From Eutreptiella sp. 'Long Island Sound 2002' (Eukaryota; Protista; Euglenida): DNA of 64,000 bases. The notes under the pieces were generated by a model. The model saw only the letters and a program-made list of their open reading frames with translations. It was not told the origin of the DNA and made no database searches. The stretch is taken from NCBI GenBank assembly GCA_964036045.1, contig OZ038378.1, forward strand, positions 183,892,001 to 183,956,000, in the 5' to 3' direction. Of this stretch, positions 23,056 through 35,200 are shown in pieces (the first letter of the stretch is position 1; every line of letters begins with the position of its first letter). A program made the position numbers and the translations under genes.

Positions 23056-23267
23056 TCAGCAGCAGCCACACATCGTGTCCAAGGGTCCGCTGCCGTCCGG
23101 CTTCACACGGATCAGCAGGCGCAGACGGGGCATGGTCCGGAGCTGTGCCATGAGGGGGTGCCACTTGTGGAACACGGCGTCGGACTCAACGAAAGGCATG
23201 CGGTTGTCATCGACCATCATGTGCAATTGATACTCCGGATGGATCGAGTGGAAAGACATCATGTAAA
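23056..23267 (-). CDS. CobW-fusion terminal exon 12 ([15 protein letters not shown]...[10 protein letters not shown])
   Basis: cgcaag|TT acceptor, phase matches exon 11; TGA at 23058-23056. Confidence 0.78.
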
Positions 23268-26200
23268 CTTGCGATGAGGTTTTGCCTGGGGTGCAGGAGT
23301 GGCGTGAGGTGAGGTGAGATCCTAGGAGTTCTCCAGGTTCAGCAACCATTAATACTGTTACGAGGGCCGTGGGTTTTAACTGGTGGATGCCCAGCTGTTG
23401 GACTCATGTCATGCCAGATCAGTTCGCGGGTTCGCCCAGGCCCTAAGTTCAGTGTCCACTGCATGACAGCTGTGCTATGCGACCTCTCTGGTTGAAATGG
23501 CGCCGGCGGGTGTATATATGCGCATTTATATTCATAATGGCATGCAAAGCAATTACATGGGGTCCCCCCATTACCGGGCGGGGACATGCAAACATAGCTT
23601 CAGGTGACAGGACCGATGTACTTCAAACACTGAAAATCCATATCCCACATCCCCATGACTGCATGTGCGCTCATGTCATCAGGCCAACTCCACTTGCTGT
23701 ATGATGTACCCTCCCAATGCAAGTGCCTCTCTAACCATGCCGCCATTTTATGGGCTATGTTGTCCATGTCGCTTGTAGTGGACATGAAATTGAGTACACA
23801 GGCTTGATTGTGGCCTACACGTCATGTGGGCTGGTTGCATGCGCCCTGTGCATGCCCTTGTGCATGGCCTGCACGGCATCCCCCCTCCCGTGCCCTAACA
23901 AGATGGCAACCTAGAGCCACGAGGCAAGGCTCATAATCTGATGCCCAACCAATGGTGAACACTAAACCATTTTCGAGGACATTGGTGAATGTGCAGCCGA
24001 AGTAGCTAGCATACTTTTAATGAGGGCTGAGGAATGGCTGGCCTAACCATGGTGGCCAGTCCGGCCCTGATGCGGATGGCTCAACAAACAACGTTCCTCG
24101 TCTTGTCCCACCCCATCCCGCGTTGCAGATGCTCCCACAAAACTGCCCTATGCAGCACTGTACGTCTGCATTTATGCACACCATTGGTAATGCCCAAGCT
24201 CATTGTAGAACACGGTGCACTTCCTTGATGACCCCTGCCCACTCCTCCAAAAGCATGCGTGTCCCCCGGTAACACATTATCATGGACTTGGTAGTGGAGT
24301 ACTGTCCAGCCCCTGGCGCAATATGGATACCCGCTACCGAATCCTGATTTTCGCGTTGGGTGTTTTGAATTTTCCCTATGCAAAATTTTTGCGACAGCAC
24401 CCACACAGGGAAAAACTATTTTATTTTTGCGATTTTTCTTGCGTTTGGCCTCCTTTTGGGCGGATATCATGGTTCATTCATTTTGGTGCCACTGAAAGAG
24501 ACCTGGGGTACCTTGGACCCTGGGATTGCAGTCCATCCTACACAGGCATACAACTGTGTATCAATTGGACTCTGGAATTGTAGTCCATAGCACAGATAAA
24601 CACCAACAAGCAAGTGTTTCGGATGATTCAAGCCCACCAGTTTTTCAACGAACTAGTTCCAAATTTGTCCATAGTAGTGCCCATGGTACACGAAATGCCG
24701 AAACACCAATGCAATTTGCAACATGGCCCAACCACTTTTTCACAAAACTGTGTGGGCGGGCTCGATGGGCATCGTATTTGAAGCATCTAAAAGTGAAGCA
24801 ATGGAGGCAACGAACAAAAGGGATGCACCATGCAGCACAAGTGTGTTTAAGTCCGAAGGGGGGGGCGGGACCTTTCTGTGCAATGCGGATGTCATTTTTG
24901 CAAAGGGCATACAGCTAAAAATTAATATTTTTCTGTTCTCTCTTTTTTTGCAGCAAAATACAACATGTGCTAGGAGAGAATCATTTTCGCAAATAATTAG
25001 GATTCACATGGAATTGGAAACAATTATGGCATGAAATTCCCAAAACCGCTAGTGGCCTTGATATATCCCCCACACACTGTGGAGATCACCGGCTCGCACA
25101 TTGAACAAACCCTACACACTGCCTCCACCCGACACTAGGTGTTGTCTATCATATTGAAGTCCACAGAATCGATAAGCATGTCATGCAACATTAACTGAAA
25201 CCCATCATTGTTCGCTCTACTGCCCTATTCAACTTTTTGTGTAGCTTAAGAACGCTCCATGCTCCATACTGGGTTAGTACTGCGCCAACATTTCTTCTTA
25301 TAGAATGCACTAGCATTACGCATGTGCTAACCCATGCACACCAATTTTGCTATGTTGAATTGCTCTTTGCAATCCAACTCAGCAATGGTGGTTGATCCCA
25401 AAGAGTCAAGCCACTGACACCAATGTGCGATGTCTGGGACATGGAGTACTTGGAATACCAAAGGAATCTCCTGAATGGGGCATCTAAAAAAAAAGCTTTG
25501 AAAGCCCTTGTTGCCATGGTCAGAATCTACCTATCTACAATTGGTTTTGGGGGTTGCGACTATTGGCGTCTATAACCACTCCAGTTGACTTAGGCTGTTG
25601 GCCTGAACAATGAGGTACATGTGGCACATGTCCACACATGGATTGTTTGTCCATCCTTTGTTTGCTGAGACCTCAAGCCTTAAAGGGGTGACCTATCTTG
25701 TGGCATCTCTCGTTTCGATTCAATGTATGCCTCCTGGTGCAGACATTTGCTCGTTGTGTCCCAATGCCATGCCCGGCAGAACCCCCTTTTATCAACAATA
25801 CGGTTGTACATGAATTGTGCCACGTTAGCCACGTAAGCCATGTCCCATCTCCGGGAAAAGCAATGTGGGATGGGAGGTCGATAGGTCAGGCGTGGCACCT
25901 TTTTTTTTACGTGCCGCGCAAACGCCAAATTGCTGCACAATTTCTCTGGCACACAAGACGTTAATTGGAAGCAGGCCACGAGGTCTCAAAAGTTGTTGTG
26001 ATGGAGTAAAAACTTGCACTAGCTTGACCACAACGTGCCCCTCCGCGTGGTGCATAGTGCCTACTTTGTGTAGCTTCCCAACACATGCAGCTAGACAGCC
26101 AAGGAAGGCAAGGCACGTCAGTTAAGCATGCTGCTAGCATAATTGGTAGGCAAGGTTTGGAATTTGCTTGGTATATACAACCCAATATTGGGGGCCGGGC

Positions 26201-32200: not shown

Positions 32201-35200
32201 GCCAACCGACGTTGGTTGACCATCGACTGCCGTCCGCTAAGCGCCAACCTCCGTCGGTTGCGTGTCAACCGCCGTTGATGAACCCAATCATGCCTAACCT
32301 CAAGCCCTCCTTAGTGAAAAAAAAATAGTACCAAGGGTTTTTTGTTCGTTTGCTGTCACACTTTTTTGTTGTTTGTTGCTTACATGTTTTTGTGTGACGC
32401 AATTCCCCGGAAAAGTCGGGGTACAAGGTTTTATGGAACCCAAGGATACTTCGGTTTTCCCAAACAAAACAACAGGAACAACCCAACTTCCACCATTGCT
32501 CCTGGGTCACATTTTTTTTCGTACGCGGGTTGCATTATCACCCCGAGCATTAGGCACCCCCCCCCCACTTGCTCCCCGCGCCTGCCCTGCACTGGGCCTT
32601 CCCCGTCGCGTCTGTGGTTTTGGGTCTCCACTCTTCGACCTTGAGCAGAGCCGTCGTAAAGCCGAAGACATCAGTGTCGGAGCTGAGGCCTTGCTTGGCT
32701 GCATTTCGCCTACTCATGCAAGGGCCCTTTCCACTTGCCTGTTCTTCAGGGTGTACAGCAGGGCATGTAGCTCTTCCTCTACTATTTCTGGGGTGTGTAC
32801 CGTGGTGCATGAGTGGGTGCACGAATGTTTTTGGGGTGTGGTGCCCCCCTTTGCTTTGTGGAGCGGCGGGACCTTGGTTGAGACCGCCTCTTCTGGGGTG
32901 CAAATATGGTGGAGCGTGCAATGCTCACGTCATCCTTCATGCCACGGTGCCAAGGCTTTACCAATGCCGCAGGTACCCAAAATGTTGTGTGTAGGGCTAC
33001 ATGCTTCGCCCCCTCACGGGACCCATTGATGGTTTAGTGCTATGCCGTACGCTTCTTTCTTTTGATTTAATTGAGGACACAGGACTCATGGTCGCATCAT
33101 TTTCACTTCTTTAAATTGGGGTACACCAAAAGAAACGTACTCAAATCAGGCCAGACACCATCCCAGGGGTCCTCTCATGTTCATGCCTCAACAGGTGCAT
33201 CTGTTCTTCATGCGATGACCCGTGTCTTTGTGGATTGTGGGGGCGAGGCAGGGGCTGCAGAGTGGGGCTGGCCATGCTGTGCGAAGCGATACAGCACACC
33301 TCCTCAAACCACTGCTGGTTGAGCTTCTTGCCAATGAAGACAATCTTGCAGCCCCTCGTCTCGCCCTCCCTCCATTCGCCCAGCTCTTGTTGCTCCACAA
33401 CATCCGCCACAGCGTGAAAGACCAGTTTGCGGGTGCTGCCAGCCTGGGCCAAAACAGCCTTGCATCGGTACAACATCCCGTTGGTCTCGCGGTCCAAGGT
33501 GGCCAACACGCGTACCCACCGGTTGAACTTCAGCAGATCAACTTCGAGACCGTCTTTGACAAGACTGAACGACCCCACCTGAAAACGCGTGCTGGGGCTC
33601 AAACAAGATGTTTGGTAATCCAAAACCAACAAGAACTGGGGCTGGCCAATGGGTGTTCCATGTTTGGACACAGAGAGAGAAGACAATGGTCTCTTATGGA
33701 CCTACTTGGATGCCCAATGGCGGCCATTCTGAGCCAACAGTTGAGAGAAAGCGACAGCGATTTTAGGCGAAGGGACGGAGGTTGTGGCCTAAGCGGGGGC
33801 CATGAAGCTGTTGAGAGAAAGCGACAGCGATTTTAGGCGAAGGGACGGAGGTTGTGGCCTAAGCGGGGGCCATGAAGCGATGAATGACGTATGGACTTTG
33901 GCCAACACCTGAACGGAGCTGAGACACAGAAAATTCTGGCTTCTGTCAGGCAAACTTACATCAGCCATCATCAGACTCCATCCATCAACCTCAAATATGG
34001 CAGATATGCTCCAGCCGCCATCAGGCAGCAAACAAGTGTGCTACTTTTCGAACAAACTTCCCACAAAAATCCTCCAAATTGGCCCCCTTCCAAACGGACC
34101 CCGCCCCCGCAAACAGCATGTGCACAGCCAGTTTGCAGTTTCCAGGTTGCAGTTGTTCCCAAACTTCCCTCAGGCTAAATCAATATGCAAAACATACAAA
34201 AGCACGTGTATTGTGTGGGCAACTTGTGATGAAGGGCACATTTCACTCTGAGAAGAGCACAAAGATTTGAAAGAATGGTTTACGGAGCATGAAACAACTG
34301 TGATCTTGCCACATGTGCGTTTGGGTGTCTGTTGGTGTGGTGCGAGTCAGTGAGTGAGTGAGCGAATGAGCGTGTATGCTTGTGTGTCCGTGTCCGTGTT
34401 CGTGCCCATGACTGTATCCATGTCTTTGTCTGTGCCCATCTCCACATCCACGTCGGTGTGCGTTGCATTGTGTTGCATGTGTGCGTGTGTGTGTGTGTGT
34501 GTGTGTGCATGCATGTGTGTGTGTGTGTGCATGTGTGTGTGTCTGTGTCTGTGTCTGTGTCTGTGTCTGTGTCTGTGTCTGTGTCTGTGTCTGTGTGTGT
34601 GTCTGTGTCTGTGTGTGTGTGTGTGTGTGTGTGTGTGTGTGTGTGTGTGTGTGTGTGTGTGTGTGTGTGTGTGTGTGTGTGTGTGTGTGTGTGTGTGTGT
34701 GTGTGTGTGTGTGTGCAATGGGGAAAACCATATTATGGAGGACACTAGTCTATCAAGGTCCAGGAGGCTGGTGCACCTGAGGGTTAGTTGCAGAGCGAAA
34801 GAAGGGTCTGACCCCCGCCCCTGCCCTCTTGGCTAGCCCCAGGAGGCGGAACGCGACGGAGGGACCGGCAGAAAGACACTAAGTGTCTGTGTCAGACACT
34901 CTGCTATGTGGCCACCCCTCTGTGGCTGGAGGCGCGCCCCGGAACCGGAAGAAACCCAGTGACAGCAACGTGCCCTGACACGCCCCTCAGACTCTGCCTG
35001 CCCTGCCACCCCACACTGCACATGGCCAAGCGGCAGTGGGAATCCTTAGGTGCACTGCCGCATTGCAGGGGGCAGTGCACAGTGGGGTTCCTTCGGTGCA
35101 TTGCCACACTGGAGGGCGTAGTGGGAAATGGGGATTCTTGAGCGTGCTGCCACTGTAACCTTGCGGGGTTTCAGGGTCCACAGCATGAGGCTGGGTTATG

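What the first reader, a model, noticed from the sequence alone, without database searches (positions are those of the whole stretch)
23056..33578. COG0523/CobW zinc-metallochaperone GTPase fused to an F-box-like plus MATH-like C-terminal module: a candidate metal-sensing ubiquitin-ligase receptor
Seen: after the CobW_C domain the frame does not stop. WFEE splices in phase to GFMKTTRP and continues through five more phase-consistent exons (~300 aa) to a stop at 23056. The extension holds [29 protein letters not shown], whose spacing resembles an F-box (..IL.YL...DL.RL..V.K.W). Further on is [13 protein letters not shown]...SYSY...FKFRLLLKP...HRISIQL...YQLHMMVDD, whose order of beta-strand motifs resembles MATH/TRAF. 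Established: COG0523 proteins (CobW, ZigA, YeiR, ZNG1) usually end shortly after CobW_C; F-box domains recruit SCF ligases; FBXL5 is a precedent for a metal-sensing F-box protein. Inference: this could couple Zn/Co sensing or GTP hydrolysis to protein degradation. I do not know this architecture from characterised proteins.
Basis: partly seen in the sequence, partly recalled or inferred. Interest (0 to 1): 0.85.

Follow-up and report, generated by a model that had tools for sequence, protein, structure and literature searches.

The report
Metal-chaperone GTPase with F-box/MATH-like tail
One real, spliced 13-exon gene of a Euglena-like protist joins a zinc/cobalt-chaperone GTPase to a C-terminal part that folds like the two modules ubiquitin ligases use to dock and pick targets. 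The same unstudied protein occurs in many protist groups, so metal supply may be tied to protein recognition or disposal there.

Summary
The fusion is real. Spliced RNA contigs from three estuary metatranscriptome runs join the CobW_C exon (...WFEE, ends 33300) to the next exon (GFMKTTRP, starts 32050) with a GT..AG intron and no mismatches. Other contigs join that exon to the one at 29148.

The extension is 302 aa in four exons, not six, and ends at the stop at 23056. The whole gene is larger than reported: 13 exons, 58004-23056, minus strand, 844 aa. It is collinear end to end with complete Euglena longa and E. gracilis transcripts (64% identity).

The same architecture occurs in more than 60 protein clusters: euglenids, dinoflagellates, brown and other ochrophyte algae, oomycetes and an ichthyosporean. 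I found no paper on it.

The predicted structure (pLDDT 88) has a C-terminal beta-sandwich whose best matches in three searches are MATH/TRAF domains (SPOP Z 8.2). The helical part before it matches F-box domains weakly but repeatedly.

Skp1 binding and any ligase role remain untested. This is a new variant of known kinds. The scan has not noted this family before on other DNA.

The parts
55695..58004 (-). Exons 1 (58004-57881, start ATG) and 2 (55840-55695). They encode a conserved N-terminal domain of about 90 aa with unknown fold.
   Evidence: tblastn with the Euglena longa protein P0053; GT..AG junction search. The domain is conserved across 23 relatives (alignment A3). There are only weak PDB hits to ubiquitin-like domains (E 0.15-0.56) and no Pfam hit.
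38479..47657 (-). Exons 3-6 (47657-47535, 45700-45602, 43802-43632, 38652-38479). They encode the COG0523 G-domain: Walker [10 protein letters not shown] (aa 116), GCMCC (aa 171), ETTG (aa 205), SKLD (aa 275).
   Evidence: Pfam cobW hits on the exon translations (4e-07, 4.8e-15, 9.5e-09). Junctions; motif positions. The nearest solved relative of the Euglena orthologue is E. coli YjiA (E 5.4e-44).
35664..37969 (-). Exons 7 (37969-37548) and 8 (35751-35664): the end of the G-domain plus a His/Cys/Asp-rich insert. The insert includes about 3 tandem 24-aa units of the type [24 protein letters not shown].
   Evidence: ORF translations. Tandem repeat of 72 nt x 3.2 copies, 96% matches, at 37547-37774. 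The boundaries 37548/35751 were chosen among GT..AG candidates and are inferred only; 35664 | 33578 gives ...SRHNKE|VGSF, as in relatives.
33300..33578 (-). Exon 9: the CobW_C domain, ending ...QQWFEE.
   Evidence: Pfam CobW_C 1.2e-12. RNA contigs cover 33299-33580.
32051..33299 (-). Intron 9 (GT..AG), removed in RNA.
   Evidence: The joint 32049/33299 is seen in runs X1, X2 and X3; contigs of 237 and 378 nt have 0 mismatches. Sequence.
31671..32050 (-). Exon 10: a linker, then F-box-like helices (about 31984-31865; DAFYQML starts at 31954), then a helical/strand connector with the invariant His and Tyr.
   Evidence: AlphaFold model of this exon with alignment A2, pLDDT 70.5. VIA-align matches to F-box proteins. 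ESM feature leads to F-box clusters, 0.85-0.89. No Pfam hit.
29149..31670 (-). Intron 10 (GT..AG), removed in RNA.
   Evidence: The joint 29148/31671 is seen in X2 and X4, with a near-identical joint in X1.
28989..29148 (-). Exon 11: the connector and the first strands of the MATH/TRAF-like sandwich (MEFTWREE at 29069).
   Evidence: RNA contigs cover 28988-29148. Junction by homology. Structural matches.
26996..27134 (-). Exon 12: middle strands of the MATH/TRAF-like sandwich ([18 protein letters not shown]).
   Evidence: Homology-guided GT..AG junctions; alignment A1.
23056..23285 (-). Exon 13: the last strands of the sandwich, FHKWHP (aa 807), the near-invariant C-terminal tail ...[10 protein letters not shown] (CxCC, codons about 23073-23059), and the TGA stop at 23058-23056.
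   Evidence: 85% identity to the Euglena longa protein over 76 aa. Of 89 family sequences, 80 end in CxCC with at most one further residue; the other 9 are fragments or divergent gene models.

Best explanation
Shown: this is one 13-exon gene (58004-23056, minus strand, 844 aa) for a conserved multi-domain COG0523/CobW-type GTPase of protists. Its parts, in order, are:
- an N-terminal domain of about 90 aa;
- a G-domain with the CxCC metal motif;
- a His/Cys/Asp-rich insert;
- CobW_C;
- a 302-aa module made of an F-box-like helical domain, a connector and a MATH/TRAF-like beta-sandwich;
- a near-invariant terminal CxCC.

Inferred: the G-domain binds a metal (probably Zn) in a GTP-dependent way, as in other COG0523 proteins. 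The MATH-like sandwich holds a specific partner protein. The F-box-like domain most likely ties the protein to Skp1 and a cullin ligase. Metal or nucleotide state would then decide whether the bound partner is metalated or marked for degradation. This is an arrangement like FBXL5: sensor domain, then F-box, then substrate-binding domain.
For: - Spliced RNA joins CobW_C to the extension in three runs.
- The full model is collinear with complete Euglena transcripts.
- The same architecture is found in more than 60 clusters from five eukaryotic groups, always with cobW and CobW_C.
- The extension model has pLDDT 88.1 and pTM 0.83.
- MATH/TRAF domains are all 50 listed Foldseek matches (E 1.9e-4, probability 1.0), the top 9 VIA matches (SPOP Z 8.2 over 124 aa at 3.4 A; TRAF6 7.6; USP7 7.5; Siah1 7.2) and most Atlas rows.
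- F-box proteins make up about 18 of the top 50 VIA matches to the window's own exon-10 model, each aligned at its F-box.
- Pfam F-box-like scores 21.4 bits (cut-off 24.3) in P0036. It also appears below threshold in P0051 and P0042, at the homologous place.
- The order F-box, connector, beta-rich binding domain is that of SCF receptors (established knowledge).
- In Chlamydomonas, the CobW+WW protein ZNG3/CBP1 binds the Zn-dependent regulator CIA5. [quoted passage not shown]
Against: - No Pfam F-box or MATH model reaches threshold on any member, and none matches the window's own sequence.
- F-box structural scores are low (Z up to 3.7). SURP domains score alike on one model. Foldseek found nothing below E 1 for the exon-10 model.
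- The Leu-Pro motif is missing in the window and in dinoflagellates (alignment A1).
- The most conserved residues lie outside the F-box-like helices.
- Z of about 8 for a beta-sandwich can reflect only a common fold.
- Skp1 binding, metal binding and GTPase activity were not tested.
- The structure of the MATH-like part was modelled on a relative that is about 42% identical, not on the window's protein.
Confidence: 0.45

Rival explanations
1. Client-docking module without a ligase. The same single gene, but the F-box-like helices are a degenerate structural spacer that no longer binds Skp1. The MATH-like sandwich docks a client apo-metalloprotein. The flexible terminal CxCC tail takes the metal from the G-domain CxCC site and hands it to the client.
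For: - COG0523 proteins are metallochaperones that use extra parts to find clients. Known examples are the WW domain in Chlamydomonas CBP1/ZNG3 (bioRxiv 10.1101/2025.07.09.663896) and the C-terminal domain thought to set partner specificity (PMC9010474).
- The tail repeats the CxCC pattern of the G-domain and is kept in 80 of 89 sequences.
- Conserved His residues (FHxWHP, QxH, LWLH) lie in the module.
- The Leu-Pro motif is lost in many members, and the F-box helices are not the best conserved part.
Against: - The F-box signal recurs in sequence and structure across distant members, which suggests it is kept for a reason.
- No known metal site is described in MATH domains.
Confidence: 0.35
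2. Membrane-targeting tail. The strictly terminal CC or CCG is a lipidation site (Rab-type double geranylgeranylation or palmitoylation). It would anchor the chaperone, with its protein-binding module, at a membrane, for instance next to a metal transporter.
For: The motif always sits at the very end, with no residue or one residue after it, in lineages that diverged very long ago. That position dependence is typical of prenylation signals such as the Rab endings XXCC and XCCX (general knowledge, not tested here).
Against: Rab geranylgeranyl transferase needs the escort protein to recognise a Rab fold, which a G3E GTPase lacks. There is no CaaX box. No tool here tests lipidation. This reading does not explain the F-box-like and MATH-like parts and could coexist with either reading above.
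Confidence: 0.1
3. Two neighbouring genes on one strand, or a rare read-through. In this reading the extension exons are a separate gene starting at the ATG just after the acceptor (MKTTRP).
For: An ATG lies 6 nt inside exon 10. An automatic gene call on a related 1.14-Mb ENA contig starts a 125-aa protein there (P0001). Codon third-position GC looks higher in exon 10 than in exon 9 (a reading, not quantified).
Against: - A cis-spliced, in-phase junction is seen in three RNA runs.
- Complete transcripts of two Euglena species and dozens of transcriptome ORFs carry both parts in one frame.
- No stand-alone version was found in a dedicated search.
Confidence: 0.02

Closest known systems
COG0523 / G3E metallochaperone GTPases (E. 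coli YjiA, CobW, ZigA, eukaryotic ZNG1)
   Same: cobW G-domain with Walker A, CxCC, ETTG and SKLD motifs; a His-rich insert; the CobW_C domain. YjiA is the nearest solved structure of the Euglena orthologue (E 5.4e-44).
   Different: These proteins end soon after CobW_C. This family adds a conserved N-terminal domain, a 302-aa F-box-like/MATH-like module and a terminal CxCC.
Chlamydomonas CBP1/ZNG3 (CobW + CobW_C + WW domain)
   Same: A COG0523 GTPase carrying a C-terminal protein-interaction domain. It is linked to a Zn-dependent regulator (CIA5/CCM1) and to proteasomal turnover in Zn deficiency (PMC13368412; bioRxiv 10.1101/2025.07.09.663896).
   Different: Its appended domain is a WW domain restricted to green algae. 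Here the module is F-box-like plus MATH-like, found in euglenids, dinoflagellates, stramenopiles and an ichthyosporean. There is no WW domain.
FBXL5 (iron-sensing SCF receptor)
   Same: The order of parts: a metal-binding sensor domain, then an F-box, then a substrate-binding domain. FBXL5's F-box is among the structural matches (Z 2.5).
   Different: FBXL5 senses iron with a hemerythrin domain and binds IRP2 with leucine-rich repeats. Here the sensor would be a GTPase metallochaperone and the binder a MATH-like sandwich. This is an analogy, not homology of the whole protein.
SPOP / TRAF / USP7 MATH domains
   Same: The antiparallel beta-sandwich fold of the last ~145 residues (SPOP Z 8.2, TRAF6 7.6, USP7 7.5; Foldseek probability 1.0).
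   Different: Sequence identity is 7-15% and no Pfam MATH hit was found. SPOP pairs MATH with BTB (a cullin-3 ligase), not with an F-box. The conserved His residues and the CxCC tail have no counterpart.

Membership tests
COG0523 (CobW/G3E GTPase) | Walker A GxxGxGK[ST], CxCC metal motif, ETTG (Walker B/switch II) and [NTS]KxD | tested here: met
   GFLGAGKTT at aa 116, GCMCC at 171, ETTG at 205, SKLD at 275 in the assembled model. Pfam cobW hits on the exons.
COG0523 (CobW/G3E GTPase) | CobW_C domain after the G-domain | tested here: met
   PF07683, E 1.2e-12, 48 bits against a cut-off of 22.
COG0523 (CobW/G3E GTPase) | GTP hydrolysis and GTP-dependent metal binding | not testable with these tools
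   Needs biochemistry.
F-box (PF00646 / PF12937) | Match to the family profile above the curated cut-off | tested here: not met
   No hit on the window's exon 10. Relatives score below threshold: P0036 21.4 bits (cut-off 24.3, E 2.2e-4), P0051 E 7.5e-4, P0042 E 0.018.
F-box (PF00646 / PF12937) | Three-helix F-box fold of about 45 aa | tested here: inconclusive
   The window's own model has helices at residues 33-39, 44-51 and 55-62 of exon 10. About 18 of its 50 best VIA matches are F-boxes, but Z is at most 3.6. Foldseek E is above 1.
F-box (PF00646 / PF12937) | Leu-Pro motif at the start of helix 1 | tested here: not met
   The window has ...NASDAF... at that place. A Pro is present in Euglena longa, P0036 and P0038, and absent in dinoflagellates. 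Some true F-boxes lack the motif (general knowledge).
F-box (PF00646 / PF12937) | Binding to Skp1 | not testable with these tools
MATH/TRAF domain (PF00917 / PF22486) | Antiparallel beta-sandwich of the TRAF-C type | tested here: met
   Tested on the model of relative P0030 (about 42% identical to the window). All 50 listed Foldseek matches are MATH/TRAF (E 1.9e-4). VIA's top 9 are MATH/TRAF/Siah (Z 8.2-6.0). Atlas returns MATH clusters.
MATH/TRAF domain (PF00917 / PF22486) | Match to the family profile | tested here: not met
   No MATH hit in the window's pieces or in 31 relatives at E up to 5.
MATH/TRAF domain (PF00917 / PF22486) | Peptide-binding groove that holds a partner motif | not tested
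CobW+WW proteins (Chlamydomonas CBP1/ZNG3) | C-terminal WW domain | tested here: not met
   No WW hit in Pfam scans of the window or relatives.

The most novel reading that the evidence does not exclude
The family is a GTP- and metal-gated SCF substrate receptor that carries out 'metalation quality control'. The MATH-like domain holds a metalloprotein client. When the chaperone is loaded, it hands over zinc through the CxCC tail. When metal is lacking, the F-box-like domain brings Skp1 and a cullin ligase, and the unmetalated client (or the chaperone itself) is ubiquitinated. This would be a second, independent kind of metal-sensing F-box protein besides FBXL5, spread across euglenids, dinoflagellates, stramenopiles and ichthyosporeans.
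Probability: 0.25. Interest if true: 0.9.

Novelty: new variant of a known kind. Interest (0 to 1): 0.68.

Why it matters
COG0523 chaperones decide which proteins receive scarce zinc or cobalt. That is a live question in ocean phytoplankton ecology and in host-pathogen biology, yet few clients and no degradation link are understood mechanistically.

This family offers a built-in clue. The chaperone is permanently joined to two folds typical of the ubiquitin system, and to a second terminal CxCC. It is present in ecologically major groups: dinoflagellates, brown algae, raphidophytes, oomycetes and euglenids.

It gives direct, cheap tests (Skp1 binding, partner pull-down, behaviour under Zn limitation) in tractable organisms such as Euglena gracilis, Ectocarpus or Saprolegnia.

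It also shows that Pfam-based annotation ('CobW C-terminal domain-containing protein') hides about 40% of the protein.

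Tried and rejected
- **Pfam on every extension exon and on 31 relatives:** no F-box or MATH hit above threshold.
- **Profile of the F-box-like region against PDB sequences:** only a chance glucoamylase hit.
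- **Foldseek with the exon-10 model:** nothing below E 1.
- **N-terminal domain as ubiquitin-like:**
  - Only weak PDB hits, OASL UBL E 0.15 and a redesigned ubiquitin E 0.56.
  - No Pfam support and no ESM Atlas hit.
  - Left as a lead.
- **Stand-alone or differently fused copies of the module:** the search returned only fragments from short contigs.
- **The other hits of the exon-10 search (P0002, P0003, P0006, P0007):** repetitive, unrelated proteins.
- **Small RNA genes in the introns:** no Rfam or tRNA match between 22000 and 59000.
- **Literature searches** for COG0523 with dinoflagellate, alga, F-box, MATH, Euglena or domain fusion: no description of this architecture.
- **Separate-gene reading:** rejected on RNA and homologue evidence.
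- **First assumed end of exon 11 at 28988:** corrected to 28989, because the laid contigs are cut at a masked CA repeat and one base fits both sides.

Full report
**What is in the sequence**

The region is eukaryotic DNA with long introns and CA microsatellites.

The CobW_C exon ends ...CAGCAGTGGTTTGAGGAG|GTGTGC. The next exon starts after ...CCCCGGTTTCAG|GGTTTCATGAAG. This is a canonical, phase-0 GT..AG intron. Left unspliced, the frame would run 52 more codons and stop at 33141.

**RNA evidence**

One search for sequencing runs found three estuary metatranscriptome runs (X1-X3, three study codes) and one probable RNA run of a related organism (X4) that hold parts of the stretch. I laid their contigs on 27750-33700.

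- The joint 32049/33299 (skips 1249 nt, GT..AG on the minus strand) appears in X1, X2 and X3. X2 record 12 (237 nt) and X3 record 19 (378 nt) have no mismatch.
- The joint 29148/31671 appears in X2 and X4, and a near-identical one in X1.
- X2 record 9 (694 nt) runs on for 469 nt beyond exon 11.
- No contig covers the intron interior between 32327 and 33122.

These are assembled contigs. They prove that the spliced form exists. They say nothing about abundance or about rare isoforms. Whether the joined form also exists as DNA was not reported (table 5b).

**Gene model**

A search of 1.84 billion representative proteins with exon 10 found P0005. It is a 603-aa protein with cobW, CobW_C and the same extension.

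Searches seeded with P0005 and P0038 gave 33 and 36 clusters. Nearly all are 740-940 aa and carry PF02492 plus PF07683 plus the extension.

The closest relative is a complete transcript ORF of Euglena longa (P0053). A Euglena gracilis sequence sits in the same cluster. tblastn of P0053 against the window gave twelve collinear pieces from 58004 to 23059.

A script then chose GT..AG junctions that keep the frame and best fit P0053. The result is 13 exons:

| Exon | Coordinates (minus strand) |
|---|---|
| 1 | 58004-57881 |
| 2 | 55840-55695 |
| 3 | 47657-47535 |
| 4 | 45700-45602 |
| 5 | 43802-43632 |
| 6 | 38652-38479 |
| 7 | 37969-37548 |
| 8 | 35751-35664 |
| 9 | 33578-33300 |
| 10 | 32050-31671 |
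| 11 | 29148-28989 |
| 12 | 27134-26996 |
| 13 | 23285-23056 |

Every junction is GT..AG. The protein has 844 residues. It aligns 1-844 to 1-777 of P0053 at 64% identity.

The extension therefore has four exons and 302 aa, not six exons. Only the junctions around exons 9-11 are RNA-verified here. The pair 37548/35751 inside the His-rich region is the least certain.

**Organism**

The nearest relatives are Euglena species. The RNA comes from estuaries. Earlier notes of this scan on the same genome also call it Euglena-like. I take it for a euglenid other than E. gracilis or E. longa.

**The family**

Named members come from these groups:

- dinoflagellates: Polarella, Effrenium, Prorocentrum, MMETSP transcripts;
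- brown algae: Ectocarpus, Ascophyllum, Scytosiphon, Hapterophycus, Laminaria;
- other ochrophytes: Tribonema, Heterosigma, Chattonella, Chrysoparadoxa, Phaeothamnion;
- oomycetes: Saprolegnia, Achlya;
- euglenids;
- the ichthyosporean Amoebidium.

A search aimed at shorter proteins returned only fragments from short contigs. It found no stand-alone module and no other fusion partner. Database names are automatic, for example 'CobW C-terminal domain-containing protein'.

**Chaperone part**

Pfam finds cobW on exons 3, 5 and 6 and CobW_C on exon 9. The motifs [18 protein letters not shown] and SKLD are present. The nearest solved relative of the Euglena orthologue is E. coli YjiA (E 5.4e-44).

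Between the G-domain and CobW_C lies a His/Cys/Asp-rich insert. It contains a 72-nt tandem repeat of 3.2 copies.

**Extension: folds**

Alignment A1 holds 31 relatives plus the window's four exons. It shows no large gaps. Its nearly invariant positions include LWLH, EFxWRxE, FKFR, QxH, RxP, FHxWHP, RLRxLxR and GPLDxMCGCC.

AlphaFold2 on A1 (first row P0030:486-791, about 42% identical to the window) gave pLDDT 88.1 and pTM 0.83.

For the beta-sandwich, three searches agree:

- Foldseek against the PDB: all 50 listed matches are MATH/TRAF domains. The best is SPOP MATH (E 1.9e-4, probability 1.0), and TM by target reaches 0.58.
- VIA-align against 48,161 representative chains: the nine best are SPOP (Z 8.2, 124 aa, 3.4 A), TRAF6 (7.6), USP7 (7.5), Siah1 (7.2), SPOP NMR (7.2), USP7 TRAF-like domain (7.1), TRAF1 (7.0), meprin MATH (6.3) and TRAF3 (6.0). 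All lie over model residues about 150-294.
- The ESM Atlas shape search returns mainly MATH-domain clusters.

Z near 8 alone would be weak. The exclusive family content of the top ranks in all three searches is what supports a MATH/TRAF-like sandwich.

For the helical part, I folded the window's own exon 10 with alignment A2 (pLDDT 70.5). It has helices at residues 23-29, 33-39, 44-51, 55-62 and 66-78.

- Foldseek gave nothing below E 1, though Fbw7 and FBXW11 had the highest TM scores.
- VIA-align gave low Z (at most 3.6). Even so, about 18 of the 50 best chains are F-box proteins aligned at their F-box: beta-TrCP1, FBXO31, AnkB, Cdc4, FBXO3, FBXL17, Fbw7, cyclin F, Fbs2, FBH1, FBXL5, FBXL2, Fbl10, COI1, SLY1 and Skp2.
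- Pfam F-box-like and F-box are the only or top sub-threshold hits in three divergent relatives at the homologous place: P0036 at 21.4 bits (cut-off 24.3), Amoebidium P0051, and Tribonema P0042.
- ESM features also point to F-box clusters at 0.85-0.89.
- A profile search of PDB sequences found nothing.

I read this as a diverged F-box-like domain. The Leu-Pro motif is absent in the window and in dinoflagellates. A Pro is kept in Euglena longa and some stramenopiles.

1. Of 89 family sequences, 80 end in C-x-C-C followed by nothing or by one residue. The other nine are fragments or divergent gene models. This repeats the CxCC pattern of the G-domain.
2. The first ~90 residues form a conserved domain (A3). 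Its only hints are weak matches to ubiquitin-like domains, with no Pfam or Atlas support.

**How it may work**

Shown: one mRNA, the conserved architecture, and the folds.

Inferred from family knowledge: GTP-dependent metal binding at the G-domain CxCC site.

Inferred from fold and order of parts: the MATH-like sandwich binds a partner, and the F-box-like domain links to Skp1 and a cullin ligase. This gives a sensor, F-box, binder arrangement analogous to FBXL5. I put this at 0.45.

The main rival, at 0.35, keeps partner docking but drops the ligase. It gives the CxCC tail a role in metal hand-over.

The strictly terminal position of the tail also fits a lipidation signal (0.1). That reading could coexist with either of the others.

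Two Chlamydomonas papers give precedent for COG0523 proteins with an added interaction domain and a tie to proteasomal turnover. CobW+WW CBP1/ZNG3 binds CIA5/CCM1, and both are degraded in Zn deficiency (PMC13368412; bioRxiv 10.1101/2025.07.09.663896).

**Novelty**

Six literature searches and a reading of the COG0523 comparative-genomics paper found no description of a CobW protein with F-box-like or MATH-like parts. The proteins exist in public databases under automatic names.

I class it as a new variant of known kinds, of good but not exceptional interest until Skp1 binding or a partner is shown.

Noticed in passing
window 58004-57881 and 55840-55695 (minus strand): Two further upstream exons encode a conserved N-terminal domain of about 90 aa that the whole family shares. 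The only hints are weak PDB profile hits to ubiquitin-like domains (OASL UBL E 0.15, a redesigned ubiquitin E 0.56). Pfam and the ESM Atlas give nothing.
   Followed up: partly
window 37547-37774 (minus-strand exon 7): A 72-nt tandem repeat (3.2 copies, 96% matches) inside the coding exon. It multiplies a 24-aa His/Gly/Asp/Cys unit of the metal-binding insert. The Euglena orthologue has a much shorter insert.
   Followed up: partly
window 55694-47658 (intron 2 of this gene): The 8-kb intron holds the tandem 1.15-kb units and telomere-like repeats that other first-stage notes describe at 48715-55433. That element therefore sits inside this gene's intron.
   Followed up: no
window 28507-28590 and 32226-32279: Short intronic stretches match many RNA-run contigs at high summed depth (about 23-92) with 5-7 mismatches and unrelated flanks. 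They look like an abundant dispersed repeat or a small expressed element. No Rfam or tRNA match.
   Followed up: partly
window 32044 (ATG of MKTTRP); protein P0001 from a 1.14-Mb ENA contig: An automatic gene call on a related assembly starts a 125-aa 'protein' at the ATG 6 nt inside exon 10 (92% identical). This is an example of an exon called as a separate ORF.
   Followed up: yes
window 28723-28983, 34243-34745, 37200-37286: Long CA/TG microsatellites lie in the introns. The one at 28723-28983 begins a few bases after the exon 11 donor and cut the laid contigs there.
   Followed up: no
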